DNA of 64,000 bases. Origin: Octopus sinensis. Lineage: Eukaryota. Position numbers and translations under genes: made by a program. Each line of letters begins with the position of its first letter. Positions within the stretch are counted from its first letter, which is position 1. Shown here one piece after another: positions 12,101-63,600 of this stretch. The notes below the pieces were generated by a model. The model worked only from the letters and a program-made list of their open reading frames with translations, was not told where the DNA came from and ran no database searches. The stretch lies in NCBI RefSeq assembly GCF_006345805.1, contig NC_043004.1, positions 88,970,001 to 89,034,000 on the forward strand, given 5' to 3'.

Positions 12101-15100
12101 TTGTCGAACATGTTGACAATTCTTCCACAGCCACCTCCTTACATAATATACATACATATATATAGGCACAAAGGTGCAGACAGAATGAAGAACAAAGAGG
12201 GTACAGAAAAAAGAGACAGAAAAGAAAAAGCAAGAATGAGACAGATGGGGGGGGGTATAAGTAGTTAGAGTAAGACGTCAGTAAAGAGAGAGAGAGAGAG
12301 AAAGATAAGAATCAAAGAAAGGAGTGTTGATATAGAGAAACAGAAAGAAAAAGAGAAAGGGAATGGTTTCTCTACAAGTTATAGCTATGGAATTCAAAGA
12401 AAGAAATCAAGACATATCTATGAAATCTAAAGATGTATTTAGTAAAATAGGTAATGAAAATAAAATGAATGTTAATAATAATGATGATAAAAAGGAATGT
12501 TAATAGTATTGTGTACAGCTATTTCCACACAGATACATGCTATCAGTTGTCTTCTTTTATGAACCCAATATGGCATCACGTTTTGAGTGAAAATGTTAGA
12601 AAATGATATGCATTGAAAAAAAAAAAACAAAAAACAAAAAAATTTTTAAAAGGAAAGCTGAACAGAAACTAAATTCTTTTAATGACATGGTGTGATATAT
12701 GTTTATTGTTAAATCAGCAGGGGCAGGGGCGGTTGGATTCTTGTGATGAAGTTCATTGTTATTTTTACTTTAAAAAATATTGTTCAGAAATCTATACTAA
12801 AAAAGTCAATATATTTACATGGTTCATGGTATACTCATAGAGACACTAAGTAAAAGTTATCGGTTATTGGTTACAGTTAAGATATTACTAATCAAACAAA
12901 TAGGATGATATCTACAATGACTCAGAAATTTTTACATCTCAACACGCATACACACGCAAGTGAGAGCTATTGGTAAATTGAATAAATTTACATAATTTAT
13001 ATACATACATGCTTAAATTAACTGATTACAACTGTTTCAATTAATCAATATAACTGATTGTAGAAAGGCATAGCTGGTGCATGGTTCCAGCACCACAGAA
13101 TAGATCTCATAGTCATGAAGAGGAAAACTCCATTAAATTATAGCATTTCTGTTGTTAAGGCAATTTATTGTTTGTCCCAGTTTACTGCCTTGTCATACAT
13201 TTAGATTATGAGGTCAACAATAGGATCAATAACCAACCAGCTTATATTAAGGCTGCTGTTGTTCTAACAGTAGGCAAATGTCTAATGCAAATAGGCTGCT
13301 GTGGAAAACTAAATATAAAACTGGATGTAAAAAATAACCATGATCAATATTTAAAAATACATGGAGTCTTAGAACTAGAGAGGAAATGGTAAGCTATGAA
13401 CAATGATGCATTACTCAAATGCTTGAAACTATTCCAGCCAAGGATTTAAGCCGTTCCACAGCATTTCTGATGAAATTAATAGTCAACAATGGTTTACCAT
13501 ATTGACATAGAACTAGAGAATGAAAACGGTATGTCATGACCAGCAAATCTTTGTGCTCCATCATGGCATGAAACACAAAAGAAGCAGAGAATCTAAAATA
13601 GTAATGAGAGAGTAGTAAAATTTTACCATGGCACCACTATGCTACAATTATAAATAAATTGGTAAATAATTGAAAGTGAAGTCTTCACAAAGCAGAAGCT
13701 CATTAAGTAATTACATCACACCAAAACTCAGGTGATTAGGGTGAAATGACAATTTCTTCACCTGTGACATTAGACAATCTTGAAATTATCTTTTTAGTGG
13801 TAGATAATAAATTGCCTGATGCCAGAGGAATTGACCTATTCAGAATTAAGAGTCCAACCCATGAACACCACTAAGTGCTTGTAGAGGATTTGAACTCAAC
13901 ACACATGATTTTGTAGGTTACCACTTTACTCTTTAGGCCATCTGTCTCTCACAAACATAAATATTTTTATTTTTGCTTTTGTAATTTAATTTACTGAAAT
14001 TTTTTTACAGCATGGTTGTGAATGAATCAGACTGAATAATATGGCATAAAGCATGGGAGAATTAACGTGTGTGTGGTGTGTGTGTGTGTGTGTGTGTTCA
14101 AGTGGAAATATACAAAAATAAATTAAGGTAAAATAACCACTAGCAGAGTTTTCCTTTTAGTTTTTGCATGAGAAAAAATGTGCATGTCTGTGTGCATACA
14201 TGCTTAACTTAAAAACTGATTAAAAAAAAAAAACGAAAAAAAATAAAATTCCAAAAATTACCTAAGTATTTGATAAGCATAATTAAAATGCAAAAAAAAA
14301 ATATACAAAAAAAAAGATTTAAAAAAAAAAAAGAAAAATTTTGGAAACCCATTGCAAGAAAACAGTCAACAAATCTTGAAAATAAAGGAATGGTGAAGTT
14401 TCAGGTGGGGAAATAAATAAATGAAGCAGATATACTGACAAGCAAGAATATCACAAAGGTGTAAATGGAATATTAACACGATTACAAAGGTCAGAGGACA
14501 GGTTTCTTTTTTTTTCTGCATCTCATATATTTTTCTAAAAGAATGGTGAAAGAGAATTTGAGGAGTAAATAAAAAAAAAAGCTTGGGTTAGGATTATTGT
14601 CTATGTAGATCTATTAGGAATTAATTCTCCTGTTAAGCTTCTTTAGGATTAATAATTTTCACTCTTGTTATTTTTCTAGTTGCTTGTTTGGATGCTTTTT
14701 TTTCTGTGCATGTTCTCTAAGGAAAAACAAAACAAAAACAAAATAAAAGCATTCAGGTTTCACATTCCTATAGTATACGAACCTGCTCCAAACCGTTTTT
14801 TCACCAATGACAGCCGATAACCTAAACCAACAAGTTCAAATTCAAGACCAGATAGTGTGGCCCCTTCAGCAATGAAATGCAAGGCAGTAGGTGAAGGGGT
14901 GCTAGGTCCGTTACTGGTTTCGAATTTTGCACGGATGTTCCCTTGGGTGCCATTTTCACTCATTTCGGAAATATCATCCAACTTCCATGTAGCCCGCTTT
15001 TCCTCGGCATTCCTGGTGGAACAGAGAAGTGGAATAAACTAAAACTCAAAATGAAGACTGTATTGAAGTACAATATGGCATGTGGAAACTGTTAATGTTG

Positions 15101-18100: not shown

Positions 18101-19786
18101 TCTGCTACGTGCTTTTAACATGGTACCAGCACCAGTGATCTTTACATGGCACCATCACTAGTATCAGTTCTGTTGTGGTGGACCGATCCCCTTGAAAACA
18201 ACAAGGTGCCAGACATCTCAGTCGTTTTTTATCTCTTCTATGGCATTTAAAAATAAATCATTAAAATAAGCAAAAGAAAATGACAGTATTACATATTTGG
18301 ATTTTTATACATATATTTGTCACGATATGTCAGAGGTAATCCAACCACAAAACTTTAAGTAACATTAGGAGCTAAGTTAAACTATTATTCAATAAATGAC
18401 CTATTGAGTCAAATACATCAAAATTATTGCAGTTGTGATCCCCATGCCAGTGGCACATAAAAAGCACCATCCGAATGTGGCCGATGCCAGCGCCGCCTTG
18501 TCTGGCTTCCGTGTCAGTGGTATGTAAAAATCCCCAACCGATCGTGGTCATTGCCAGCCTGTTCTGGTCCCTGTGCTGGCAGCACATAAAAAGCACCCAT
18601 TACACTCTTGGAGTGGTTGGCATTAGGAAGGGCATCCAGCAGTAGAAACACTGCCAGATCAGACTGGAGCCTGGTGCAGCCTCATGGCTTCCCAGACCCC
18701 AGTCGAACCATTCAACCCATGCCAGCATGGAAAACGAATGTTAAACGAACATTAAACGATGATGATGCAGCTCTAACTATGCATTGAGAGTAACTGCCAT
18801 TCATTTATTCGCTTACACCTCACCATTTTAAAGTCCACTTTTCCATGGGCTAAGCAGAAATTATTGAGGCAGATTTTCTATGGTCACAGGCAATTCCTAC
18901 TGCCAATCCATATCTGTTTCCAAGCAAGGTAATATTTCCCCCATGGTCAGACATGATTTTTTGCAGAATATTGGAAATGGATGACATCCATTTACAACAA
19001 TCTTGCAATATCAAGACAAGGAAGGCAGCAAGCTGGCAGAAACATTAGCACGCCGGGCGAAAGGCTTAGCAGTATTTCGTCTATCTTTATGTTCCGAGTC
19101 CAAATTCTGCCGAGGTTGACTTTGCCTTTCATCCTTTCAAGGTCGATAAATTAAGTACCAGTTGTGTACTGGGGTCGATCTAATTGACTGGCCCCTCCCC
19201 CAAAATTTCTGGCTTTGTGCCTAGAGGAGTAAAGAATATCAAGACAAGGAGACGTTCAGCTTTAATACAAATGCTGATTATTCAAGGCCAAAATACAGAG
19301 AAGTGGTAAGTAAAGTAAGACAAGTACTTACTGAGATATGAGTTGGGAATTGATTCTGATGCTATCTAGACGTGTTGTACCATTCAAACGAAAACTTAAC
19401 ATGGAGGGAGATGGGTTTTCTATCAACACTTTAATGATACCTGCAGGAAACGACATCATCAAATTTCCAGACAAAGTCACCGTACACCTGAAAGTAAAGG
19501 TAAACAAAAATATGTGATTTGGATATGCTAAAGAAATATATTAAGTGTGTATGTCTGTGTGTATGTTCTTTTTATTGTTTTACTTGTTTCAGGCATTAGA
19601 CTGTGGCCATGCTGGGGTGCTGCCTTGAAGAATTTTAATCGAATGAATCAATCCCAGTGTTATTTTTCTGATGCCAGGTACTTATTCTATCAGTTTCTTT
19701 TGCTGAACTACTACGTTACAGCAATATAAACAGAATAACACCAGTTTTCAAGCAGTGCTGGGAGACAAACAAAAATATACACACTT

Positions 19787-23100: not shown

Positions 23101-26100
23101 TAGATAAGATGTAGTTTGGCTTTGTGCTAGAAAGAGGAACTACTAATACCCTTTTCTTAATGAAACAACAGCAGGAAAAATACTTAAGAGTGAACTTTTA
23201 CATGTGGCATTTGTTGACCTGGAGAAAGCAACTGACAAGGTTTGAAATTCTACAATCTGATGGTCACTAAGAAAACTAAAAGTAGACAAATAGCTTATGA
23301 GGGCTTTTTAAACCGTGTACAGAGGTGAAGCCAGCAAGGTCAGAGTGAGCAATGAGTTTAGTGGTTAATTTAGCCTGTTCAGACTCAACAGGATTCGGTT
23401 CTTAAACCCCAATCATGTTCAATATAGTCCTCAAAGCTGAGACAATTTTGAATTTAAGCCTGCCTGTCCATGGGAATGCCTACAAATTCAGCTATAAGAA
23501 CCAGGTCATCAGTATACAAAATATTTAGAAGTTCAAACATGGAAACAAAATCTAGAATCAGAGACTTCAAAGTAAGGTCAGTAAAGGCTCAAGTTTTTGA
23601 GAAGAAAACAAGACCCTGCTTACCATAAGGGAAATAACCAAACTCAACTTAGAGAAAGAAACATGTAGGAATTCCAGATGGAATTGTGTATCTATACGGA
23701 TATACAAAAGGAGTGGTAGGTGGGATCACAAGACATTTAGCAAAGAGAGTAGACTTCATAAGAAGTAAATGGTAGGAAAAACTCCCTAGAAATAGCTAAT
23801 TGCTTTCATTACCTAAGTGACCTAAGTAGCAGTGGCGGTGGCTGGTCTGAAAGCATAGTAACCAGAGGAAGAATAGATGAGGTTAAGTTCAGAAAGTTAT
23901 TATTACTGTTGGTGGTAGCATAGGGTTTCACTTGCACAATAAAAAGCAGCTTATATGATGCTTGTATTCAGGGTGTGATACTGCATGGTAGCAAGACAAG
24001 GGCACTGAATGTAAAGTATTTATAACAACTGGAAATAATGAAGTAAAAGCGCTCCATGAGATGTGTAATGTTAGTGTATGGAACAAACTGGATTTAAGAA
24101 GAATTAGTCGCTGTGTGCAAGAGAAAAGACTGTGCTGATACAGATGGAGAATGTCAGATGTATAAAGAATTTCCATTGCTTGAAGTGGATGGAAGTTGTA
24201 GAAGAGGGAGACCAAGAAGGCATGGCATGAAATGGTGGACATTGATTTCAAGAAACAATCTCATGAAAGAAATTACAAAGATTGTCAATGAAGTGGTATG
24301 GGAGAAGATCCACCCACTCATGAAAGCAGGACAAACGTCCATAAAAATGATGGTGATGCTGGAATATTAACATCTGAGTCTCTCACCTATCATGTTCTTG
24401 TTAGTGATGACGATGAAAGCCAATCTACGTCAAGATATCAAATGCATGAACAATGAAGTGATGTGCACATTAGCCTCAGTGTGTCGCAAAGCAAAGATGT
24501 ACCCTACTAATTTATGACTTACCTGATTAAAAGCAAACCAACTTGGAGAGGAGGGTACAGACTGAGGACGGTAGCTTTGAGATTTAGGACTGTCAGTAAA
24601 ACTGGTAGTTGAGCAGGGATCGAAACAGTCAATCTGAGGCAGAGATGACCGACTGCGGTTGTATTTTGGAAGAGATGGTGGAGGCTGGATGGGACAGTAA
24701 AAGAAGCTAAGAGGAGAGTCAATCAAGCTAGGAGAGGAACTGAAGTAATCAGAACTACTCACCTGTGGTAAAGGAGTTTTAGTGCGTGAAGGAGGTCTAG
24801 GAGGATGAGGAAAGGTAGTATGTGGGGCAGCAGTAGTCCCCAGACTAACTGGAGATGTGGTTTGACTAGAAGTGCCAACTACTTTGGTATTAGGGGGTAA
24901 GGGTAATGCACATAGATCTTGATTAGGTTGGCTAGTAATGGCTGCATCACTGGCATCTGTAAATACAGCAGACAAGAATAAAAATGACGTTTGAATATGG
25001 AATTTCTCAGCAACAAAACAAAAGTGAAGAAATAATTTAGTCCTGATACACAGTGAAAAATAGGAGAAGATGCTCAAGGCTAGGATGCCTTTAGGTTTAT
25101 ATTGTTAGGGCTGAGTTGAGACTAATCAACAACAAGGTAGTTTCTATGCAATCATTTGACTTGAGAGAAATGGAAATGTAATCTCCCTCAATTCCCTAGA
25201 TTTTTTTTTAAAAAAAAGAACATTCTATAATATATTTATAGATTTGCTATGAAAAAAAAAAAAAAACTTGGTGGTCACAACTGGAAATACTACAGCTACA
25301 TAAATCAGAACAACAAAATTCATCTCATTTGCAAATAGTAAAACAAAGAAATAAACTCTGACATTCCACCTCAAGTAATGAGAAACAATAGAATGATGGG
25401 AAATTTTTAATATAAGCTTCAATTGTTGAGAACAATTCTCTTGAAGGAAGGAAATTGACAGTTGGCAGACATATATACCAGTTCCTTTGCATATATATTT
25501 GTGGCCTTCGTCATTGGACTAGAAACAATTATTATTATTTATTGGATAACATCTTTCCCTATCTCCTCCACATGTTTTTATAAAATCTACCCACTCTGAG
25601 TTTTAACATTTCTTGTATACAATACAATTACTTTACTTTATGCAAAGGAAAGGTGTTAATGAAGCGTTTTTCATACTTTGGCCACTGCTTCAAAGTCAGA
25701 CCAGGACATAAAATCAAGGAAAACTACACTTTTTTTGTGAAACATCAAGGTAGTGTGTACACAGAGATTCTGGCATGGTTGGTGAAATCAAACAGCATAT
25801 CTAAATTCAGCTAGAAAAAAAATGCTTCAGAACACTTGTCTATTTAACAGACACATTTTCCATCCTCAAATTCTGTAGACTTGTGGAATAATATGTTGAT
25901 GGGGATTATGAAAACTTACTAGAACTTGAAAGAGTTGTTGTTGAACCACTGTCTGATGTTTGGAGTGTTACATCTGTCTGTGAAGATGGGGCAAATGGTG
26001 ATTGCATATTGTAATTGTTTCCACCAGTTGGCGTAGAAGCAGCACTTGTGTTAAATAAATCCAGTTTCAAAAGATCATGACTGGGTTTCCCAGGGCTACA

Positions 26101-30647: not shown

Positions 30648-33600
30648 GTTTGTCCCCCCTAGCATTGCTTGACAACTGATGCTGGTGTGTTTATGTCCCC
30701 GTTAATTAGCAGTTCGGCAAAGAGACCGATAGAATAAGTACTGGGCTTACAAAAGAATAAGTCCCAGGGTCGAGTTGCTCGATTAAAGGCGGTGCTCCAG
30801 CATGGCCGCAGTCAAATGACTGAAACAAGTAAAAGAGTAACTATATCAGTATAATTTTTTTGCTATAACGATAGAGATAAAGCTAAAGAGCAACAGGGCT
30901 GTGAGGTTAACGTGCTGATTGCTGGCCAAGTGTATAAATCTTAGTAAAGAGATTAAGCATGGGACATAACTCTGTGTAAACCAAATACCATTGTTACATT
31001 ATATTCACCAGAGTTGAGTGATTAACATGCTGCAAAGGCAATTGTTTTGACAAAAACTGTTCTGCCCATATTAGTATTTTAGCTTCTTTTCTTCTTTCTT
31101 TTTTGTTGCTATTGTTTGCTTTTTAATGAATGTAAAACAACAAAAAGAAAAGGAAAAAATTGTGTTTAGATATTGGATTATCCAAACAAACCTTCATATT
31201 TGTCATATATAAAGTAGCATACAATAAATAATTCTGTATAATGTATTTGAACTAAATATAATCAATCTAATTATCTTAGATATTATAATATTATTTCTTT
31301 CACACAGCTACCGTCAGTAGCTATATGAAAAAAATAAAGGGGAGCAAGGCTCAAATAGAGGTAAGTTTGAACTAATGACAGCTGGTCAAATTGATGAAAT
31401 ATTGCAGCAATTAACAATTAATAATTAAAAATACATTACCTGAATCACTATCACTTTCACTAGAGCACCAGCTTGTTTTGTCTCCGTTCAATACAAAAAG
31501 TTAAGGATAAATACAAATCTATAGATTTAACAAGATATATATTTCATGTCAGTCATTAGAAGAAAAATATAATTATGAAAGAAAAATCTTAATTACTAAT
31601 AGTATTTTCAAAACTCTAACAGAAAGGAGAGGGAGTTGTTACACAATAACAACACATGGCATGATACAAATAAATACTTTAAGTGGAATGCCAGCAAATT
31701 TTATATATGTGAAAGATAGTGAAATAGGCTACCAATAATAATAATCCTTTCTACTATAGGCATGAGGCCTGAAATTTGTAGGAAGGGGACTGATCAATTA
31801 CATTGACCCCAGTGTTTCACTGGTACTGATTTTATTGACTCCAAAAGGATGAGAGGCAAAGACAACACCAGCAGAATTTGAACTCAGAACATAATGAGTC
31901 ACAATAAATACAACAAAGCATTTTTTCTGATGCTCTAACAATTCTGCCGGCCCTCTGTCTTAATAATAATAATCCTTTCTACTATAGGCACAAGGCCTGA
32001 CATTGGGGGGAGGGGGATAGTTAATTACATTGACTCCAGTACTCAACTGGTACTTATTTTATTGACACCCAAAAGGATGAAAAGGCAAAGTTGACCTCAG
32101 CAGAATTTGAACTCAGAATGTAGCAGCAGACGAAATGTTGCTAAGCATTTCGCCCAGCCTGCTAATGAATAATAATAATGATAATAATAATAATAATAAT
32201 AATAATAATGGTTTCAAATTTTGGCACAAGTGCTTTTGTAATATATGTTTCATTTGCAATAATTACGAACAGAACGTATATAAGTCATAGTTCTCCAATC
32301 CATGCCAGCAAGGAAAACTGATGTATGATGATGACAATGATAACTACAATGAAGCTGATGATGAAAGTAAAATATCTTAAATCAAGATGCAATACCAGGC
32401 GCTGGCTCTCATGGCTACTGACCTTAACTGATTGGAAGCATTAGAATGTAAATGTTTTGTCTTGGTGTAAAAGATGGGCTACAGCAAATCTTCTGCTCAA
32501 TACTACAGATTTGCTTGTCAGTTGTTTGACTTTAATCAATTGAGCACGTCCCTTAGTGGCTGATGATATGTGCATCTCTGATCATGAGCAGAAGTAGTGG
32601 GGGAGCATGATAGTCATGCACTGAGAGGAATTCTTTGGGGTTTGAATAATTCACCTTTGGATACATGGCTGTTTCATTAAACATCCTTAAACAACCCTTA
32701 ATCAGGGACCTTTTGAGCAGGATGGGCTACTTGACCTGAAAATTCTAACTGGATCCCACCTGCAAGGACATGCGCTGTTTACCTTGATATGAGACCACCC
32801 TGTAGTGCACATATGGCTGTGATGATGAGCATGGTGTACCCTTATGGGATGGGTAGTCATGATGGGTATATTGGGCTTTGTATATTTGTGCCCCAGTGTC
32901 ACTTTGATAGCATGCACTGCTCTCTCACTCAATAATAATGATAATGATAATTATTTCAAACTTTTGCCACAAGGGCAGCTTGAGAGAGGTGGGGATGAGT
33001 TGATTACATCAATCCCAGTATTCAATTGGTACTTATTTTATTGACCCTGAAAGGATGTAAGGCAAAATCAACTTCATCAGAATTTGAACTCAGAACTTAG
33101 CAACAGGCTACGCATTTCATGCAACAAACTAGTGATTCTGCCAGCTTAATAATGATAATAATAATAACAGGTGTGGTTGTGTGGTAAGACACTTGCTTCC
33201 CAACCACATGGTTCCAGGTTCAATCCCACAGCATGACACTTGGACAAGTGTCTACTACAGCCTCAAGCCAACCAAAGCCTTGTGAATGGATTTGATAGAC
33301 AGAAACTGAATGAAGTCTGTTATATAAATGTATATAAATATCTGTGAGTGCGTGTCTTTGTGCCTGTGTTTGTACCCCACCACCACTTGACAATCTGAAA
33401 ATACATCCAAAAACCTTAGAAATACCCTACAATCTAAATGTATTGCAAAAGTCAGCATTACTTGGAACTGCATGCATATTGCGTAAAGTACTGTCTGTCT
33501 GAGGTCCTTGTTGCAACTTGACAAACAGTACAAACTCCAGGTAGACACAATATCTTCAGTCGACAACTTCACAATATTGTATATTGTGCAACGTCTATAA

Positions 33601-35634
33601 TAATAAGAAAAATAATAATAATAATCCTTTCTACTATAGGCACAAGGCCTGAAATTCTGGGGGAGGGAACTAGTTGATTAGAGTGACCCCAGTGCTTGAC
33701 TGGCATTAATTTATCAACCCCAACAGGATGAAAAGCAAAGCCGACATTGGCAGAATTTGAACCCAAAATGTAAAGACCAGGCAGGCTCATAATTCTGCCA
33801 ACAATGATAAGGATACAGTCTAAAAGAGTATCGGGCTGTTTACTGTAACCTTCTTCATCAACATCAGGTATTACCTAATAAAAAAAAATTACAAAATGTA
33901 ATTAACATTAACTATTAAATGATCAAAAAATTATATTCATAACAATAACAAAGAGTGGACTTCAAACTGTCCTTACTAACAATACAGAAAGATAAGTTTG
34001 ATGTAAGTTTATCTTCACTTTGAATTTAATTTGTTGTTATATACTTAATATACTATATTTAATTTGTTGTAAAAATACAAACCCAAACAATTGAACAAGA
34101 ATTTATTAAAAAAATCATTTAAAAAGGTACTTACACCATTGCTACTTGTAGTTTCTCTGTAGGGAAAAAAAAAAACAAAAACAAGAAAGATCAATAAAAA
34201 TGACATGAAGTTCATATAAACAGGAATTGAATGATTAAATAATGATACAGCATAATAAATTAAATGTTGTTGGTAATATTGTTGTCGTCATTGTGGAAAT
34301 AGCAATAGCATGAAACCATAAGGTCACTGTGAACTAAGTCAGTGATTGTGATTCCCAGCTGGAGGAATTTCATTACCTAAAGCACTAACATATTTCTTTA
34401 TCATTTAGTCAGGAGAGATGGCATCAGCCAAACCAAGAATATGTTTTTCAAACTCAGTTCTGTATCAACTGATCAATGTTCTAATTTCTCTACCACATCC
34501 TCTTTTACAATATATAGGCGTAGGAGAGGCTGTGTGGTAAGTAGCTTGCTTATGAACCACAGGGTTCTGGGCTCAGTTCCACTGCATGACACCTTGGGCA
34601 AGTGTCTTCTACTATAGCCTCAGGCCGATCAAAGCTTTGTGAGTGGATTTGATAGACGGAAACTGAAAGAAGCCCATCGTATATATGTATATATATATAT
34701 ATATATGCATGTGCGTGTGTATACATTTGTGTCTCTGTGTTTGTCCCCCCAAACATCGCTTGACAACCGATGCTGGTGTGTTTACATCCCTGTAAATTAG
34801 CAGTTCGGCAAAAGAGACCAATGGAATAAGTACTAGGCTTACAAATAATAAGTCCTGGGGTCGATTTGCTCGACTAAAGACATGCTCCAGCATGGCTACA
34901 GTCAAATGACTGAAACAAGTAAAAGAGAGTAAAGAGATATGTGTGTGGGAACATGTATGCATATCATCATCATCATCGTTTAACGTCTGTCTTCCATGCA
35001 AGCATGGGTAGCACACTTGACAGGAGCTGGCCAGGTAGAAGACTATCCCAGGCTACTGTGTCTGCTTTGGCAAGGTTTTTATGGCTGGATGCCCTTCCTA
35101 ACACCAACTACTCTAAAGAATGGACTCGGTGCTTTTTATGTGGCAGAAGCACAGACAAGGTTAATTTTGGCATGATTTTTACAGCTGGATGCCCTTCCAA
35201 ATGCCAACCATTTTACAGTGTGGACAGGGTGCTTTTTACTGTTAATGTTTGCTGTTATGTTCAGCTATAGTGAAAACAATTTTGCATTAATCTGAGAGGG
35301 TTATCCTGTACTTTTGTAGAGTACAAATTTATTCTTAAACAAGAATATTGTTGACAGTGACTTCGAAATTTCAGCCAGTTAAGTAATATGATAATGGCTT
35401 AATTGGTCAAAACTTCCATGTCAGTTAGCAACATTCTTGTTTAAGAATAAATTTAAGTACGTATGCGCAGGAGTGGCTGTGTGGTAAGTAGCTTGCTAAC
35501 CAACCACATGGTTCCGGGTTCAGTCCCACTGCGTGGCATCTTGGGCAAGTGTCTTCTGCTATAGCCTCGGGCCGACCAATGCTTTGTGAGTGGATTTGGT
35601 AGACGGAAACTGAAAGAAGCCTGTCGTATATATG

Positions 35635-40350: not shown

Positions 40351-42469
40351 TTTTTGCTATTTTCGACAGCCTTTTTTTTAACTAAAGGATTAATCACTCA
40401 ATTTCTTGCCCTTTTCTCCATGAGATAAGGATAGCTATTTCAAAAGTCTAACAATCAATTATTACACCCATCTCACTAATCCTTTAGTAAATAAAAAATT
40501 GGCCATAGATAATAGGAAAGTACCCACATCATATATATATATATATATAGCTTTCAAAACATTTTTCTTTATTTAAGATCTAAAAAACCAACTAGAAACT
40601 AATTAAAGACTGACAGGAAACTAGACTAACAGATTAGATGAGTGCTGGTTGTAAGAAATGGTGAAAGCAATATGGGCACAGCAGAAAAATCCACTGGATG
40701 TTATCAACAAGTGCAAAATACACATACCAGAGAATGTAAAAATGTCAAGAACACTTTTGGGTGAACTTGGGCTAGATGAGTCACTGTCTGTTTCAAAGAA
40801 AATCAAGAAATACAAGGAAAGAAGAAAAAAAGATAAACAAAAATCACAGAAAAATGAGCTGTAGAAATCTATTGAGAATTATAATGGTGAGGAATAGAGG
40901 AAAGGAAGAACAAAGGAAGAAGATGATATGTATGGCTGAAGTTAAATTTGGTGTGATAAAAGCAAGAGTTAAGCTAATGATGAGGTCTATTGAGGTTTTT
41001 CAATTTAAAAAATTTGAATTTTTAAAATTTTATTTATTGATTTTTTTTTATATAGTTATATAATAATGAAACAATGATAGGGGAAAAAAATCAATGAAGG
41101 TTGACAGTTTCGATAGCAATATATTCAAAGTGTTAGATGAAAGACCAGAGATAAAGAAGATGAGTCGAATCTGACCTCACAGCAGAACCAGAAGGCCAGT
41201 GGGGGTGGTGGGGAAGAACATGAGAAGGGGAGCTGGTTCTAGAATAATGAGGTATGAAAGGAGTCAGATATCAGAGAAAATAATGTAGGACAGAGAAAGA
41301 CATAGAACAGAATAATAAGGCAAGTGATACATGCAAGAGATGAGAGAGAGAGAGACAGAGAGATGGTAATACATGAAATGTACTCAAGCAGAATAAAGGT
41401 GATATATATCCATGCAACAGTGAGAAAACAGCAGATTACCAATATATATATATATATATATGTGTGTATATATATATATATATATGAGAGAAAGAGAAAC
41501 AGTGAGAAAGAGATGGAAGGAAGGAAGAATGGAAGAGCTCCTCAAATTAACAAGTTTGGTGACACACAGCTCATGGATTGGCTTCTGAACTAATCATACT
41601 AAATGTGTATTGAATCAGTTACATCAATGATTGGAAAACTGGAAAAATAATATTAAGAACCATACAATCTCATAAATCTACTTCAGAAGATTTCCTTCGT
41701 TCTATTCTTGAAAATGCAAATACAACATGAATGTATATACCTAACTATTATATTTTTTTTTTTCTTATTTCAAAGTTATATATTTCACAATCAAATGACA
41801 GATATTTGGACATTTAAAATGGAACTTTTTTTTTTTTTTTTGAGACATTTCTAAAACAACCCAAGCTACAACATGGTGGGAGGTGGTTGATTTTGTGGTT
41901 TAAAATTAAATGTAAAACTCTCCCCCAACCCATACATCTGCTAAATGCAATCCAACACCATAAGCTATCACGAACAGATTCAATCATTTGTTCATTCATT
42001 TAACCCTTTCATTACCAACCCGACTGAAACCGGCTCTGGCTCTGTTGTACAAATGTCTTATTTTCTTAAGGTTTTAATTAAAATCTTCCACCAAACCTTA
42101 GTCACAATTTGTGTTCCTAACAATAGTTGAATGATAACTAAGTTATTTTACTAAATTCTTTGTTTATATTTAAAGTAATTGAAAGAAACACAGAGCATCT
42201 CAAAATAAATACAATAACGAAAGGGTTAACATCTATTTTTTACCATTCTAGCTTGGTCTTCAACAGACATTTATTCGAGGGAACAATTTATGACCAGGTG
42301 CCCTTCCTGTCACCAACCTTTGCCTGTTTTTCAAGTAAGCAAGTTTTTATTACTCCACTGGTCTTCTAAAGCATTGATTGGCCAGTCAACAAGGAATGTA
42401 AACATCTATCTTACCAGTTCACTCAGACAGTGACAAGCAAAGCCATGGGTTGTATGTGCAAACACACAA

Positions 42470-43237: not shown

Positions 43238-46200
43238 CACCATTTTACCAAATTTTTAATGAAAATTAAAGGGTGTGGGAATATAATATAGCAACTAATA
43301 ATTTAATTAATGAGGTCTAATTAAGTATTTAATCTAAGCACTAGTAAAAAACAATAAGTCAAAACCTACAAATAATAATTTGCCATTATTATAATGCTTA
43401 CAGTAAGTTCTATAAAGAACACTTGACACATGAGGTAGTAAGTTTGTAGCCGTGGGACATAAGTTATGTATTCTACAAGATGCTACTAATTACCCAACAC
43501 ATCTCAGTTGATTAATGAAGAAATAATTATTTTGACATCCGCTACTGTCCCAAAAACATTTAGGCAATTCCTGTGAACAATGTACAGAGATAAAAATCAA
43601 GCTAATGAGAGAGCCCTTTGCATAGTTGCTTGACATGCTAGAAATAGCTATGAAATTTCCATCAAATCACAACCCTATTGTTAGGACACATTGGATAATG
43701 TACTTCCTAGATCTCTCATGTCTGAACAAAACAAACTGAGATGGCCATAGCTGGAAAACCTTTTTATTATAATTCTGCTGGTTTGGGGCAGATTAGGCGG
43801 GGGGGGGGGTCATGCTAAAATAACAACAACAAAGATAAAAATCAATCATTTTATTGCTCCTGATGAAGGAGCAGGAAGTCCTGTTACCAGATGCCCTCCC
43901 AAATAGTATTAACCTTTGTTTAACATTTTTCAGATTATTTAAAACGTAAATTAGAACTTTCAACAAAACAGTTAGTTGGGAATAATTACAAAAAAATTTA
44001 ACTGTAGGTAAGACGACTACAAATGTTCTTTTCGTTCATTTTCTGCTTTTCTTTTTCTTTTTTTGGTCAAAATATCAACTCATTAGTACCAACAAAAATA
44101 CACACTGGTTGGTGTTAACAAAAAACCACAAACTGGTTAGTTATATTTAAAAAAAAAACAATAATAAAGAATGCACATTATTTATTAGGTATCAAACAAG
44201 TAGATTACATGAGAATATGAAGCCATACCATCACCACTGCCACACAATCTGCTGATATTAGGAACTGGTCACCAAAAGTAAAAAAAAAATAGTTAAGCAT
44301 GCATATGCTATGATATTAATTGCAGCAGTTTTACATTAAAGAAGCCAAAAAAAAAAAAAAAAAAATTAAAGAAAGAAAGAAAAAGCCAAACAGAAAAAAA
44401 GAAAAGCTTAAGTCCTCCAAGAAAAGCCAGAAAGAGAATATTGTATTGTAAAGGTAATGATGGTATTACATGTTCGAGACACTCTCAGCTTGACACTGCG
44501 GCTCAACGGTCCTGGCTGGGCTTCAGCTAACACAGGACTGGGACTCCCACTGGAGTCTGCAAAGCAATGGTACTGACATCTCACAAAACTAGCCAATTAA
44601 TAATATTATAGTTTCAGTATCTACATACTGACATTGTACTGCTGCTACTGCTGCACTAAGAGACATGGAAACAGAAAATCATAATTAATGGAAGGTTCTA
44701 TAGATCTCAGCAGAAGTAAACCAATTTGAGTGCATACGGCTTTTTTATGTGTCTGTATACCTATTTTGTAAGCTGTATGTTTGTGCACATATTTTCTAAG
44801 TGAGCTTGTGACAAATCCTATAAAACTGTGATATAATTCATATAATGATTAAAATATAATTCTGTTAAATTTATGATGAAACACAACCAAGGTGTTAAAA
44901 GAAACATTTGTCAATTTGTTGAGATTTTGTGGGATGCATTTTGTTCCGCTGATTAAAATGTTTCAGCATTAAATATTTACAAAATAAATTCTTAACAAAT
45001 TTGTTTATAAAATAATTTATGAATAATATCAAAGATGATTTTTGAAATATATATTTTTCTCAAATATATATTTGAAATATCTGTAAAAAATATAGAGGCA
45101 GAGAGATCGATACTTTCCAATTCTATTCTAAACCAAGGTCTTTGTAATAACAAGAATAGAAACATAAAAAAAAATTAACAAAACTGTAAAATATGGATCG
45201 ATTGAAATGGGTTGGAGAGGAATGGTCAAGACTAATGAAGCAGTAACAGCAGTAGTCTGTAATACTGAAACAAGAAATTTTAGTAGAAACTTTCAAACAA
45301 TTTAGAATGACTAGCTTAAAAATATTGAGACGTTACAGTAGGCAGTTACCAAAGATCAAACATTACTTCACTTCAAAGGGACTGAGAAAAATTAAGTAAA
45401 AAAAATAAATAAAATGAGACATTCAGAAGAAACAAAAGAATCTTTTGTCTATCAATTACTTTAGTTTTTTTTTTAATTTTATTTTTTAGTTAGCATCCTT
45501 AGAGGAAACAAACAAATTAATTTACATTCATTGCATAATCACTGCACAGCTAACCACAGTATTCTGATATGAGAAAAAAAAAGGATTGGCTATTATGAAT
45601 AAAGAACCTGGTTGCACTTGGTTGCAAGATCATGAGAAAAAAATTGTAATGCTGAATTTTCATGGTCAAAGTGATCAAACAAGAGTCAAAAAGAATTCTG
45701 AAGAATGTTGTCCTCTTACTATGGTATGGAAGCAATTGAAGGGAGCAGAAAGTTTGGGTAAAAGACAGATACTAAGGATATTCCCCCAGAGTAATAAAAG
45801 ATATAAAACAGGCATCATTCCATCAAGAGAAAAATAAAAAAAAAAAAAGGACAAAAGTGTGGTAAAGAATAAAAAAAAAAAGAATTATATGAAACAAGCA
45901 AGAGCTTTAGTGTGGTGGATAAGAAGCAGGGTCAAATGATATCAGCTGTGTGAATTATAGGAAAAACATTTGAATGAAATAGGATATATTAAGATCCTAA
46001 TCACAGCTATGAGAATTATCAGGTGATAAGAGCTGTTATAACAATTACAGAATCACAGCTATGAAATTATCAAGAGATAAGAGCTGTTGAAATGTTGATC
46101 ATAGTTACTTAAATTGTTACAAAATGATAATTCACAGAATTTTCGATTCCTTAAAGAAGTTTTTTTTCCTCTAATGTGCTATAATGAATTTTTAATCATT

Positions 46201-58100: not shown

Positions 58101-60636
58101 CTAAAACATGTCTAATCCTTCAGATGCTGTAGTTTTAAGAGGCAAGGTAGACATGTGCTCTAAAGAAGACTAATTATCATTGGATTATGCAAATAGGTCA
58201 TTCTTATTAAGTCAGTACTGGATCATGTAATTTGAAATAAAAAAACTGCTACGTGTTGTAGCAGCTACTGAATATTTTTGAAAGACAACTGGTCAGGTGA
58301 GAACTTTGGTGCAGTAGATCAGAGTCATCTCTCATGCTTTCATTAGAAATTCCAACATTAAGTTCAGCAAAGTTATAAGACTTAACTAATAGCTGATAAC
58401 AGCAATAACAATCTTCACTAATGACAATAATATAAAAGTTCAGTTTTCTTGTTAAGGGACACAGTGGGTTCTTGTAGTATGTGCAGTTTCTCAGAAAGAT
58501 GAAATCGGTGATTGTGCACTCTGGGGGTTTTTGTCAAGTATACATCAAGTCTTGCAAGACAGGACAGTTCTTGATCCTGAAGTCACAAGATAAAATAGGA
58601 CAGATTGGTTGGTTTCCTTCGTCTCTGAACCTAAAGGAGTATATATGCTGAGTGCATTTTCCCTTGAAATTGTTGGTTTCAAATCCTGTGTGGTTTCTTG
58701 GGATATTATCAAGTGGTGTAAGGTTCACAAACCAATGCTTTAGAAAGGTAAAAATCTCCTCAATGGACATGTAGATAGATTTCAGCAGTTGTGGGTGGGT
58801 GGGTGTCTGAGATGAAGGGTACAAAGATATGTGCTTCTTTTTCTGTTATAACATGCAAAATCGGATGTGATGTTATCTAGACAAGAGTAATTAACCTTAA
58901 TATTATACACATTAAAAAGCTTGAGGTATTTATGTCTACTTAGGAAATGGCATTTAATAGAGTTGAAAAGTAGATTGCATGTAAACTTTTTTACCAATCA
59001 AATATCAGAATGATTTCAGAAAATGATATCTAAATATTTATCATGCTTCTTTATCAGCTGCCATTTTCATAGCAAAGTACTGTGATAGCAACATTTTACT
59101 TACATCACAAGATTGAGACATTTTCTTCTCAAATTCATCTCGTACTGTTGCATATTTGTCAACAAGATTTTGGTATTCATCATCTGACAGAAATTAAGAA
59201 CAAACAGAGACGAAATTAATAGGTATAAAGGAAACTGTAAACACAATAATTAAAAGATAAAAATTCACAAAGTGTCATAAATACTAGCTTTAAGCTTACT
59301 TATCAATAACAAAGTAATGAGAATTAACTTGTCGCATATATTAGCAATCAACATACTTATTTGTCTCAGGAACCATAGGTTTAATACTTAGTACAAGATT
59401 AACACTTCATAAGAAAAAAATTAAGATATTTTTATATTTACTTTCATAAATATAAACTAATAAATTAAGAATTTTTTTTCTTTAAATTAACCAAAAATAC
59501 ACTCACATTTAAAGAAATATTAATTAAATTCTATACGTAACTTCATCATCAATTTGCATTTACTTTTCTATGCCTGCATAAGACAGAACTTTATGCTGAT
59601 ACCGACCCAGTTGCTAACCATTTTTAGTTGCCTCATACGACAAATAGGTACATAGTTTAACAATTACAAGCCAGGATACCTATAGTGTGTCTGTGCATGC
59701 TTCTACATTCATTATAAGTATCCTGGTTTGTAACAGATAAACTATATACTTGTGTGTCATATGAGACAACTAAGATATATATATATATATATATACTAGC
59801 AGCTAAGCCAGTTTCACCCGGTCTGTTTGGATGACGTGGCTGTGATCATTTTCGGTTAGGCATAATCTATAACAGCGTTTGTCAACCTTATCATTTCGGG
59901 TCTACTGTTTCGATTGGAGCTTCCAGCTATATGAAAATTTCCTGATCCCACCCCGTCAGAAAACAGCTTCTAAGCAACTGGTTGTTTTGATGGCAGAAGA
60001 AAGGGAAATTCCATTAGAAAAAGTTTTAAGCGATTTTCTCGATAAGTATGGGGGTTAGGAAAAAAATACAAATTGCATTCCAATCTATGCACCCGTCTCC
60101 GTATGTGTGCCATTTTTCACATGAATACAAACAGTTGTTTGGCTGTGAACCTCAAGACAAGAGAGAATACAACAATCGCCCATGTCCAATTTATATTATA
60201 TATATATATGCATGCATGCATATAAACATATATCTCATCATAATATATATATTATGGAGGTGCACTGGCCCAGTGGTTAGGGCACCAGACTCGCAGTCAT
60301 AGGATCGTGGTTTCAATTCCCAGACCGGGCGTTGTGAGTGTTTATTGAGCAAAAACACTTAAAGCTCCACGAGGCTCCAGCGGGGAGGGGGGGGGGCAAA
60401 CTCTGCTGTACTCTTTCACCACAACTTTCTCTCACTCTTTCTTCCTGTTTCTGTTGTGCCTGTAATTCAAAAAGATATAGCTTGTCACACTCTGTGTTAC
60501 GCTGAATATCCCCGAGAACTACGTTAAGGGTACACGTGTCTGTGGAGTGCTCAGCCACATGCATGTTAATTTCACGAGCAGGCTGTTCCGTTGATTGGAT
60601 CAACTGGAACCCTCATCGTCATAAGTGACGGAGTGC

Positions 60637-60673
<37 letters not shown>

Positions 60674-63600
60674 ACTCGTATAGTTAATCAGGTGATACAC
60701 AAAGGGGTCATACCCAATGACTGGTGTAGCAGTATAATAGTCAACTGCTACAAAGGTAAAGGTGATGCCCTAGATACAAATAACTACAGAGGTATCAAGC
60801 TGTTGGACAGGTATGAAGGTTACGGAGAGGGTCATAGCCCAACTAATTAGAGAGAGAGTTAGTTTAGATGAGATGCAGTTTGGGTTTGTGCCAGGGAAAA
60901 GTACTACTGATGCTATATTCCTGGTAAGGCAGCTGCAGGAGAAATACCTAGCCAAAGATAAGCCCCTGTACCTGGCTTTTGTTGACATGGAGAAAGCCTT
61001 CGACAGGGTCCCCCGATCCCTTATCTGGTGGGCAATGAGGAAACTAGGGATAGATGAATGGTTAGTGAGAGCTGTGCGGGCCATGTACAGGGACGCCGCT
61101 AGTAGGGTGAGGGTTGGAAATGTGTACAGTGAAGAATTCCGGGTAGAGGTAGGAATCCACCAAGGCTCAGTACTCAGCCCCCTCCTATTTATCATAGTCC
61201 TCCAGGCAATAACGGAGGAATTCAAGACAGGATGCCCTTGGAGCTCCTCTATGCTGATGACCTTGCTCTAATTGCTGAGTCGCTATCAGAACTGGAGGAG
61301 AAGTTTCAGGTGTGGAAACAAGGATTAGAATCGAAGGGCCTCAGAGTCAATCTAGCTAAAACCAAAGTCGTAATCAGTAGGAAGGTAGACAAATCACAAA
61401 CACCTTCAGGTAGATGGCCCTGCTCGATCTGTAGAAAAGGTGTAGGTAGAAACTCTATAAGATGCACCAAGTGTAAGCTATGGACACATAAGAGATGCAG
61501 CAATGTCAAAGGAAGGCTAACTAGGAAGATGGTTTTTGTATGTGGCAGATGCTCAGGAACAATAAACACTGAAAATGCTCTGAGACCAACTTCCGTCACT
61601 TTCCAGGGAGAAAAACTAGAAATAGTTGATAGTTTCCGTTACCTAGGTGACCAAGTCAGCAGCGGGGGCGGGTGTGCTGAAAGTGTAACTGCTAGAGTAA
61701 GAATAGCTTGGGCAAAGTTCAGAGAGCTCTTACCTCTACTGGTGACAAAAGGCCTCTCGCACAGAGTGAAAGGCAGACTGTATGATGCGTGTGTACGAAC
61801 AGCCATGCTACATGGCAGTGAAACATGGGCTGTGACTGCTGAGGATATGCGTAAGCTCGCTAGAAATGAAGCCAGTATGCTCCGATGGATGTGTAATGCC
61901 GGTACTCACACTCGGCAGAGTGTAAGTACCTTGAGAGAAAAGCTGGACCTAAGAAGCATCAGTTGTGGTGTGCAAGAGAGACGTTTGCGCTGGTATGGTC
62001 ATGTGGCGAGAATGGATGAAGATAGTTGTGTGAAAAAGTGCCACACCCTAGCGGTTGAGGGAACCTGTGGAAGAGGCAGACCCAGGAAAACCTGGGACGA
62101 GGTGGTGAAGCACGACCTTCGAACTTTAGGTCTCACTGAGGAAATGACTAGAGACCGAGACCTCTGGAAGTGTGCTGTGCGCGAGAAGACCCGGCAGGAC
62201 AAGTGAGTCCATAACCCGTGGCCTTCTACATGGGATGGAGCCAGCCTACGTATGCATACCTTCCCTTCTTGGGACACAAAACTCTACTTGTGAAGACGTG
62301 ATGAGGCAAGTGAGGATCAGAATCGAAATCGATCAATGGAAATTGCGGATGTGCTACCAGTGCCGGTGGCATGTCAAAACTCTGCTTGTGAAGACCCGTT
62401 GAGGCAAGTGACGATCAGAATCGAAATCGATCAATGGAAATCGATCAATGGAAATTGCAGATGTATTACCAGTGCCGGTGGCATGTAAGAGAACTTTCCG
62501 TTTCGCGACCGTTGCCAGCACCGCCCCGTTTCGTGTCCATTGCCAGCCTCGCCTGGCCCTCGTGCCGGTGGCACATAAAAAGCACCATCCGTTCGTGGCC
62601 GTTTGCCAGCTCTGTCTGGCACCAGTGCGGGTGGCACGTAAAAAGCACCCACTACACTCACGGAGTGGTTGGCGTTAGGAAGGGCATCCAGCCGTAGAAA
62701 CACTGCCAGATTTGACTGGGCCTGATGAAGCCTTCTGGCTTCACAGACCCCAGTAGAACCGTCCAACCCATGCTAGCATGGAAAACGGACGCTAAACGAT
62801 GATGATGATGATGATGATGATATATATAATCATTCTTAAAACAGTTTTATATTCATATTCTCTAATGCCATCATATCATTAGTGAAATTACAACAAGTAT
62901 ATTTTAATAGTTTCCCATACATGCTAAGAATAAAATATACATTTTGAATTAGAGAAAAAAATTAACAAACAAGAAATGTAGAAAATTCGTTCAAAACAAA
63001 TCTAAATTTAGGAAAAAAAAAGAATATATTATATTACTATGATAAAAACTGTTTCTAACTACATAATACAGGCTTAAAAAGATATAATAAGACTGAGCAG
63101 CAGCAGATTACTGATAATATAATTAATAAATTGTAAACTTAAAGTTTTCACAAGAGAGTATTAAGTTTCAGTTTCGGTTCATTTCACCATCTTTCACTTC
63201 TTCCTCTTCATACAAGTACAGCAGCTAAAGCAATATTATTCATTTGCTTTATATATATATATTACATGTATGTGTGTCTGTATTTATGTATGTACATACA
63301 TACGTATGTATGTATGTGTATGTGCATGTATATATGTATACTGAGACAGGCTTCAACTAGAATTGGTTCAGGCCATGACTAACTTAACAGCTTAGCCACA
63401 GCCTTTAGGCTGAAATATATAAAAGAATGTGTGTGTGTGTGTGTGTGTGTGTGTGGATATGTTATGTATGTAACTGTGTATCTGTTTTAAGACAGATATA
63501 TTAAAATATTTCATGGGCAAACTAACATGTAATTTATTAACCTACATAATATCTAAGCCCCTGAATAGGTTTTGGGCTTAATCTGTGGTCATAAAACATC

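What the first reader, a model, noticed from the sequence alone, without database searches (positions are those of the whole stretch)
31482..33816. U12-type (minor spliceosome) GT-AG intron splitting the AP2-activating linker of FCHo
Seen: the intron after ..[16 protein letters not shown] begins GTATCCTT and has TCCTTAAC followed by 18 nt ending in an atypical GAG acceptor. Both signals are exact U12 consensus. The other 20 introns have ordinary U2-type donors. Established: DVDEEGY and the acidic Ser cluster are adjacent AP2-binding/activating blocks of FCHo linkers, and U12 introns are often rate-limiting. Inference: minor-spliceosome activity could gate production of AP2-activating FCHo here; retention would truncate the protein to F-BAR plus the first motif.
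Basis: partly seen in the sequence, partly recalled or inferred. Interest (0 to 1): 0.72.

Follow-up and report, generated by a model that had tools for sequence, protein, structure and literature searches.

The report
Conserved U12 minor intron in octopus FCHO2

Summary
The window carries exons for residues 211-968 of Octopus sinensis FCHO2 on the minus strand. Of its 19 complete introns, one is U12-type. It has donor GTATCCTT at 33816 in phase 1 and branch site TCCTTAAC at 31507-31500. The other 18 introns are ordinary GT...YAG introns.

The acceptor call is probably wrong. All six O. sinensis RefSeq isoforms, most O. bimaculoides isoforms, the Argonauta model and two assembled cephalopod mRNAs read ...[12 protein letters not shown].

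The same phase-1 U12 intron occurs in Takifugu FCHO2 (AT-AC), Capitella (GT-AG) and Elysia (GT-AG). FCHO1, FCHO2 and SGIP1 are listed minor-intron genes in human and mouse.

The proposal that minor splicing gates FCHO output was not tested and applies equally to any minor-intron gene. This is a real but ordinary feature of low novelty. The small twist is the rare GT-AT terminus with an alternative AG.

The parts
33817..33874 (-). Exon f, encoding [19 protein letters not shown] plus the first base of a split codon (phase 1). It corresponds to the N1 block of the FCHO linker.
   Evidence: Exact match to O. sinensis XP_036361447.1. DVDEEGY is identical to the start of the human FCHO2 N1 peptide.
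33809..33816 (-). U12-type 5' splice site GTATCCTT
   Evidence: 8/8 match to the U12 5'ss consensus, unique among the 19 introns. Orthologous donors are GTATCCTTT in Capitella and Elysia and ATATCCTTT in Takifugu.
31491..33816 (-). U12-type intron as used in the RefSeq models: 2,326 nt, GT-AT termini, phase 1
   Evidence: Apart from an equivalent 1-nt-shifted TG-TA reading, this is the only junction in the window that yields ...[12 protein letters not shown]. All 6 O. sinensis isoforms read that way.
31500..31507 (-). U12 branch-point sequence TCCTTAAC, with branch A at 31501 or 31502
   Evidence: 8/8 match. The branch A is 10-11 nt from the AT 3' end and 19-20 nt from the GAG.
31491..31492 (-). 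Main (inferred) 3' splice site, terminal dinucleotide AT
   Evidence: It occupies the same codon position as the canonical CAG of the Elysia orthologue.
31482..31483 (-). Using it replaces LNGD with Y, a net loss of 3 aa.
   Evidence: The corresponding junction peptide appears in O. bimaculoides isoform X2 and the O. vulgaris ab initio model. No O. sinensis isoform uses it.
31440..31490 (-). Exon g, encoding (L)[16 protein letters not shown], the start of the acidic/Ser N2 block. It is followed by a U2-type donor GTAATG.
   Evidence: orthologue alignment.
31734..33776 (.). At least four copies of a ~200-nt interspersed (SINE-like) repeat that fill much of the intron: about 31734-31897, 31962-32126, 33003-33103 and 33614-33776
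   Evidence: the repeat finder families D2-D4. No Rfam match.

Best explanation
This is the octopus copy of an ancient, conserved U12-type (minor-spliceosome) intron of the FCHO/SGIP (muniscin) gene family. It interrupts the disordered AP2-binding linker in phase 1, between the N1 block (DVDEEGY...) and the N2 block (acidic Ser cluster). By inference from how U12 introns are known to work, U11 snRNP would recognise GTATCCTT at 33816 and U12 snRNP would pair with TCCTTAAC at 31507-31500. The 3' cut would then be set mainly by distance from the branch A. In Octopus sinensis the ancestral AG at that distance has become AT. The main junction is therefore 33817^31490 (intron 33816..31491, GT-AT), which encodes ...[12 protein letters not shown]. 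The next AG, 9 nt downstream at 31482, can serve as a minor alternative 3' site and gives a protein with Y in place of LNGD. Shown here: the signals, their uniqueness within the gene, conservation of position and phase, and the protein models. Inferred: use of the minor spliceosome and the relative use of the two 3' sites in this species.
For: Signals: 8/8 5'ss and 8/8 BPS, found only in this intron of 19; the other 18 are GT...YAG with pyrimidine tracts. Identity of the window: O. sinensis XP_036361447.1 residues 211-968 map exactly onto it. Junction: all six O. sinensis isoforms read [11 protein letters not shown], which only a GT-AT junction at 31491 can produce. O. bimaculoides X1, Argonauta and two de novo assembled mRNAs (L005, L006; uninterrupted 924-aa ORF) read the same or VNGD. 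Other molluscs conserve (N/H)NGDK(T/N)SW. Orthologous U12 introns at the same codon position and phase: Takifugu FCHO2 ATATCCTTT...CTCCTTAAC...AC; Capitella GTATCCTTT...TTCCTTGAC+11 nt AG; Elysia GTATCCTTT...TTTCCTTGAC+9 nt AG, where the exon resumes at (N)NGDK and the branch distance is 10 nt, as at the octopus AT site. Catalogue: FCHO1, FCHO2 and SGIP1 are listed with ATATCCTT donors in human and mouse (PMC6717393 supplement). GT-AT is a documented, splicing-competent U12 subtype (PMC1557818). O. sinensis was used as a minor-intron-containing species in an intronIC survey (PMC10639083).
Against: I examined no RNA-seq junction reads for O. sinensis itself. The GT-AT call rests on RefSeq protein models and on conservation. 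Annotation pipelines sometimes place non-canonical junctions by protein homology (a caveat raised in PMC7367187). The genomic 3' ends in O. bimaculoides, Argonauta and the species behind the Logan transcripts could not be fetched, so they may have a canonical AG there. One O. bimaculoides RefSeq isoform and the O. vulgaris model do use the GAG site. Dependence on the minor spliceosome is inferred from sequence only.
Confidence: 0.82

Rival explanations
1. One reading: a GT-AG U12 intron spanning 33816..31482, with the atypical GAG as the principal acceptor, producing ...TLLD-Y-KTSW.
For: GAG is the first AG downstream of the branch site. This junction is in frame. The O. vulgaris model P0121 and O. 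bimaculoides isoform X2 read this way.
Against: None of the six O. sinensis isoforms reads this way. The 9 nt that would then be intronic encode the conserved NGD in frame. The branch-to-3'ss distance would be 19-20 nt, against 10-12 nt in the Elysia and Capitella orthologues. Elysia's acceptor aligns with the upstream site. The O. vulgaris model appears to come from ab initio prediction, which would be expected to favour canonical sites (my inference; that annotation also splits the gene in two).
Confidence: 0.12
2. The intron is removed by the major (U2-type) spliceosome, and the U12-like motifs are coincidental.
For: The termini GT...AG (to the GAG) are formally compatible with U2 splicing. 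Each 8-mer on its own occurs at chance frequency in the window.
Against: The donor ACT|GTATCC matches only 3 of 6 positions of GTRAGT. The GAG lacks the pyrimidine-tract and YAG context that all 18 other acceptors have. The chance of both exact 8-mers at the two ends of one intron is about 5e-9 (derived). The same motifs sit at the same position in three other phyla.
Confidence: 0.03
3. One reading: minor-spliceosome activity is a regulated, rate-limiting gate on production of AP2-activating FCHO. Retention would yield an F-BAR+N1 truncation or an mRNA destroyed by nonsense-mediated decay.
For: The intron has kept its position between N1 and N2 in all three vertebrate paralogues and in lophotrochozoans. 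Retention would add 82 codons and then a stop. Minor introns have been proposed as regulatory switches (PMC3728624, seen in the listing).
Against: No expression or retention data for octopus were examined. In the mouse supplementary table, file 7 has a single small entry for the Fcho1 intron (0.034), which I take to be a retention level although I did not read the column headings. Lingula fused these exons and the louse gene has no introns, so the intron is dispensable in some lineages. Larue et al. 2023 argue that neutral processes explain much of minor-intron evolution.
Confidence: 0.15

Closest known systems
The U12-type introns of human and mouse FCHO2, FCHO1 and SGIP1 (MIDB; Olthof et al. 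2019, PMC6717393)
   Same: Same gene family. The human FCHO2 donor ATG|ATATCCTTT fits ...AAT G|AT (N329/D330) of the peptide [26 protein letters not shown], which puts it at the same linker position between N1 and N2 in phase 1 (this placement is my inference). The Takifugu FCHO2 locus shows that position directly.
   Different: The vertebrate copies are AT-AC. The octopus copy starts with GT and ends in AT, with an alternative AG.
The orthologous GT-AG U12 introns of Elysia chlorotica and Capitella teleta FCHO2
   Same: GTATCCTTT donor, TTCCTTGAC branch site, phase 1 and the same codon position. Elysia also has the same 10-nt branch-to-3'ss distance.
   Different: They end in a canonical CAG. 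In octopus that position reads TAT, and the next AG is 9 nt further on.
Non-canonical GT-AT U12-type introns (for example human/mouse DEADC1 and SLC24A6; Sheth et al. 2006, PMC1557818)
   Same: A U12 5'ss and BPS combined with a terminal AT. This is a rare subtype (4 human, 3 mouse) reported as splicing-competent.
   Different: Different genes. The octopus case also has a nearby AG that is annotated as an alternative 3' site in a sister species.

Membership tests
U12-type (minor-spliceosome) intron | 5' splice site matching [A/G]TATCCTT at intron positions +1 to +8 | tested here: met
   GTATCCTT at 33816-33809, 8/8. The best score among the other 18 introns is 5/8.
U12-type (minor-spliceosome) intron | Branch-point sequence TCCTTRAC close to the 3' end (about 10-20 nt) | tested here: met
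   TCCTTAAC at 31507-31500, 8/8. The branch A is 10-11 nt from 31491 and 19-20 nt from 31482.
U12-type (minor-spliceosome) intron | No conventional polypyrimidine tract plus YAG acceptor | tested here: inconclusive
   Only 9 nt (TTTTTGTAT) separate the BPS from the 3' end, and neither candidate end is YAG. However, the simple pyrimidine fraction (0.76) is not distinctive, because the BPS itself is pyrimidine-rich.
U12-type (minor-spliceosome) intron | Terminal dinucleotides GT-AG or AT-AC, or a documented rare subtype | tested here: met
   GT-AT for the RefSeq junction and GT-AG for the alternative. GT-AT is a documented subtype.
U12-type (minor-spliceosome) intron | Position and phase shared with U12 introns in orthologues | tested here: met
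   Takifugu (AT-AC), Capitella (GT-AG) and Elysia (GT-AG) all have it in phase 1 at the same codon position. The human/mouse catalogue lists the family.
U12-type (minor-spliceosome) intron | Splicing depends on the U11/U12/U4atac/U6atac snRNPs | not testable with these tools
   This needs knock-down or a minigene assay. From the literature only: O. sinensis is treated as a minor-intron-containing species.
FCHO / muniscin endocytic adaptor | Architecture of F-BAR domain, disordered linker and mu-homology domain | tested here: met
   Exact match to O. sinensis 'F-BAR domain only protein 2'. The cluster proteins carry precomputed Pfam domains PF00611, PF22699 and PF10291. The window itself holds only the last part of the F-BAR domain, the linker and the muHD.
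FCHO linker AP2-binding blocks N1 and N2 (Zaccai et al. 2022) | The N1 DVDEEGY... motif followed by the acidic/Ser N2 block | tested here: met
   Octopus [16 protein letters not shown]|[20 protein letters not shown] against human [26 protein letters not shown]. AP2 binding itself was not tested.

The most novel reading that the evidence does not exclude
In octopods the ancestral AG of this ancient U12 intron was lost. That leaves a GT-AT intron whose distance-measured 3' cleavage competes with an AG 9 nt downstream. The two products differ by LNGD versus Y in the spacer between the N1 and N2 AP2-binding blocks. If the ratio of the two were regulated, for example by tissue or by minor-spliceosome activity, it could adjust N1-N2 spacing and so AP2 activation. 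More broadly, keeping a U12 intron at the N1/N2 boundary in FCHO1, FCHO2, SGIP1 and lophotrochozoan FCHO could reflect a conserved splicing checkpoint on this endocytic initiator.
Probability: 0.08. Interest if true: 0.5.

Novelty: new member of a known kind. Interest (0 to 1): 0.2.

Why it matters
It matters mainly for annotation quality. The intron is a clear example of how minor introns break gene models. The O. vulgaris annotation splits this gene in two and uses the wrong-looking GAG acceptor. An older O. bimaculoides model reads straight into the intron. The Lottia model skips the small exon that follows it. Biologically, the work adds one lineage-specific detail to a minor intron already known to be conserved across bilaterians: a rare GT-AT terminus with a nearby alternative AG. 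It does not open a new question about endocytosis or splicing unless use of the two 3' sites, or retention of the intron, proves to be regulated.

Tried and rejected
- First homology search: a 506-aa concatenated query missed the full-length octopus proteins, because at 911-968 aa they exceeded the length limit. A 699-aa model with the search restricted to the linker found them.
- Locus look-ups for isoforms that are not the longest product failed. The O. bimaculoides and Potamilus genes were too long to fetch, so I could not read the genomic 3' splice site in a second octopod.
- The O. vulgaris locus L003 ends about 700 bp short of the acceptor.
- A full-text search for FCHO together with 'minor intron' found nothing. 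The evidence was in supplementary tables. A second catalogue paper had no supplements held.
- The other GTATCCTT (28719-28712) and TCCTTAAC (17284-17277) on the gene strand lie deep inside U2-type introns, not at exon edges. I treated them as chance matches.
- An in-frame alternative 3' site at 31488|31487 (terminal GA, 13 nt from the branch A) was considered. It would give ...D-YGD-KTSW, which no retrieved protein shows.
- The Rfam scan of the intron found nothing.
Full report
**What is in the window.** The minus strand carries the 3' three-quarters of an FCHO2 (F-BAR domain only protein 2) gene. tblastn with mollusc orthologues located exons from 59.2 kb down to 9.1 kb. Residues 211-968 of Octopus sinensis XP_036361447.1 then mapped onto the window without a mismatch, in 20 exons. 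An O. vulgaris locus is only 95-98% identical at the DNA level. The window is therefore O. sinensis, or coding-identical to it. The first ~210 residues (most of the F-BAR domain) lie outside the window.

**Checking the observation.** The exon encoding [19 protein letters not shown] ends at 33817 with a split codon (phase 1). The intron starts GTATCCTTAT at 33816. TCCTTAAC lies at 31507-31500 and is followed by 18 nt ending in GAG at 31482.
- Neither 8-mer is enriched in the window: 2 found vs 2.2 expected, and 3 found vs 2.6 expected.
- Placement is what counts. From those frequencies, both motifs falling at the two ends of one given intron has a chance of roughly 5e-9.
- In a table of all 19 complete introns, this is the only one with an 8/8 U12 5' splice site and an 8/8 branch site. 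The other 18 are GT...YAG with pyrimidine tracts, and most have GTAAGT- or GTGAGT-like donors.

**The acceptor is probably not the GAG.** A linker-focused protein search then retrieved cephalopod proteins.
- All six O. sinensis RefSeq isoforms, all but one of the eight retrieved O. bimaculoides RefSeq isoforms (X2 is the exception), an Argonauta hians model and two proteins from Logan RNA-seq assemblies read ...[12 protein letters not shown], or VNGD.
- The Logan contigs L005 and L006 carry the whole 924-aa ORF uninterrupted, so they are spliced mRNA.
- I enumerated every donor/acceptor pair around the two exons. Only intron 33816..31491 (GT-AT), or its equivalent 1-nt shift (TG-TA), yields the RefSeq peptide.
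- The Y form occurs in an O. vulgaris model, from an annotation that also splits the gene into two, and in O. bimaculoides isoform X2. X2 differs from X1 only at this junction.
- The AT end lies 10-11 nt from the branch A. The GAG lies 19-20 nt from it.

**Orthologues.** The same intron is present in three other lineages, always in phase 1 at the same codon position:

| Species | Donor | Branch site and 3' end | Type |
|---|---|---|---|
| Takifugu flavidus FCHO2 | ...GACATCG\|ATATCCTTTTT | CTCCTTAAC...CCAC\|ATGCC | AT-AC |
| Capitella teleta | ...CCTA\|GTATCCTTTCC | TTCCTTGAC + 11 nt ending AG | GT-AG |
| Elysia chlorotica | ...GACA\|GTATCCTTTATT | TTTCCTTGAC-ATTTGCCAG\|ACAATGGTGACAAA | GT-AG |

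- In Takifugu this is the only U12-like donor at an exon edge in the gene.
- In Elysia the exon resumes at (N)NGDK, which is the position of the octopus AT site, and the branch distance is again 10 nt. The upstream site is therefore the ancestral 3' splice site. In octopus its AG now reads AT.
- The intron is absent from Lingula, where the flanking exons are fused, and from the louse gene, which has no introns.

**What is already known.**
- The supplementary tables of Olthof et al. 2019 (PMC6717393, the basis of MIDB) list FCHO1, FCHO2 and SGIP1 as minor-intron genes in both human and mouse. The donors are ACA|ATATCCTT, ATG|ATATCCTTT and GCT|ATATCCTTT.
- Zaccai et al. 2022 (PMC9054013) define the human FCHO2 linker blocks N1 (314-328), N2 (334-357), N3 and C, and give the peptide [26 protein letters not shown].
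- The catalogued human donor fits ...AAT G|AT (N329/D330), which lies between N1 and N2. That placement is my inference; Takifugu shows the position directly.
- Umasankar et al. 2014 (PMC4215538) showed that this conserved acidic, phosphorylatable linker region binds AP-2.
- GT-AT is a documented, rare and splicing-competent U12 subtype, with 4 human and 3 mouse examples (Sheth et al. 2006, PMC1557818).
- Larue et al. 2023 (PMC10639083) used O. sinensis as a representative species in an intronIC survey and note that molluscs are relatively rich in minor introns.

**Mechanism.**
- Shown here: the sequence signals, their uniqueness within the gene, conservation of position and phase across phyla, and the protein models across the junction.
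- Inferred from established knowledge of U12 splicing: U11 recognises the 5' splice site, U12 pairs with the branch site, and the 3' cut is set mainly by distance from the branch A. That would explain why an AT at 10 nt can be used and why an AG at 19 nt can compete.
- Retaining the intron would read 82 codons into intron sequence, partly a SINE-like repeat, before a stop. A premature stop that far upstream would be expected to trigger nonsense-mediated decay, or otherwise to leave an F-BAR+N1 truncation.
- The proposal that minor-spliceosome activity gates FCHO output is a generic hypothesis for minor-intron genes. Nothing here tests it, and loss of the intron in Lingula and the louse shows it is dispensable in some lineages.

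**Limits.**
- I examined no O. sinensis junction reads.
- The genomic 3' ends in other cephalopods could not be fetched.
- RefSeq can place a non-canonical junction by homology (a caveat in PMC7367187).
- The GT-AT assignment therefore rests on RefSeq models, on conservation of the in-frame NGD codons, and on the alignment with the Elysia acceptor.

**Verdict.** This is a real U12 intron. The donor, branch site, phase and position in the protein were called correctly. The acceptor was probably mis-called by 9 nt. The feature is an orthologue of a catalogued, ancient minor intron, so novelty and interest are low.

Noticed in passing
window 31734-33776 (also seen in other introns of the gene): The U12 intron is packed with at least four copies of a ~200-nt interspersed, SINE-like repeat. 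The repeat has an (AAT)n-like stretch at one end, as read on the + strand. One copy starts about 40 nt from the 5' splice site, so the open frame that runs past the donor is largely repeat-derived. No Rfam match.
   Followed up: partly
window 44470-44556 and 40728-40787 (minus strand): Two cassette exons in the linker, [29 protein letters not shown] and [20 protein letters not shown], are included or skipped in different RefSeq isoforms. They lie upstream of the Lys-rich stretch and the N1 block.
   Followed up: partly
window 24520-24762 (minus strand): The reading frame stays open for about 80 codons ([18 protein letters not shown]...) past the GTGAGT donor of the Pro/Ser-rich exon, up to a second GTAAGT. 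This could be an alternative donor or a retained segment. No retrieved protein contains it.
   Followed up: no
O. vulgaris P0121/P0002 (locus L003); O. bimaculoides P0148; Lottia P0132: Gene models go wrong around this intron. O. vulgaris splits the gene into 511-aa and 300-aa products and uses the GAG site. An older O. bimaculoides model reads into the intron (CILIIAGRIM...). The Lottia model skips the small exon after the intron.
   Followed up: partly
L001 (Takifugu flavidus) 18984-19012: In the fish AT-AC orthologue, the branch site CTCCTTAAC is followed by T, a run of about 19 C residues and then the terminal AC. This puts the 3' end about 23 nt from the branch A, which is unusually far. 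The cause could be an assembly artefact in the homopolymer, or use of a different branch point.
   Followed up: no
L007 (Lingula anatina) 12906-13050; L008 (Pediculus humanus) 301-2940: In Lingula the exons on either side of the U12 intron, and the next exon, are fused into one. The louse FCHO gene is a single uninterrupted 2,640-nt ORF. Both represent independent loss of the minor intron.
   Followed up: partly
window about 60000-62800: This stretch is G+C-richer than its surroundings (0.45 vs about 0.35). It has several long overlapping ORFs on the minus strand and lies inside the intron upstream of the first exon in the window. It looks like a transposable-element insertion but was not examined.
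   Followed up: no
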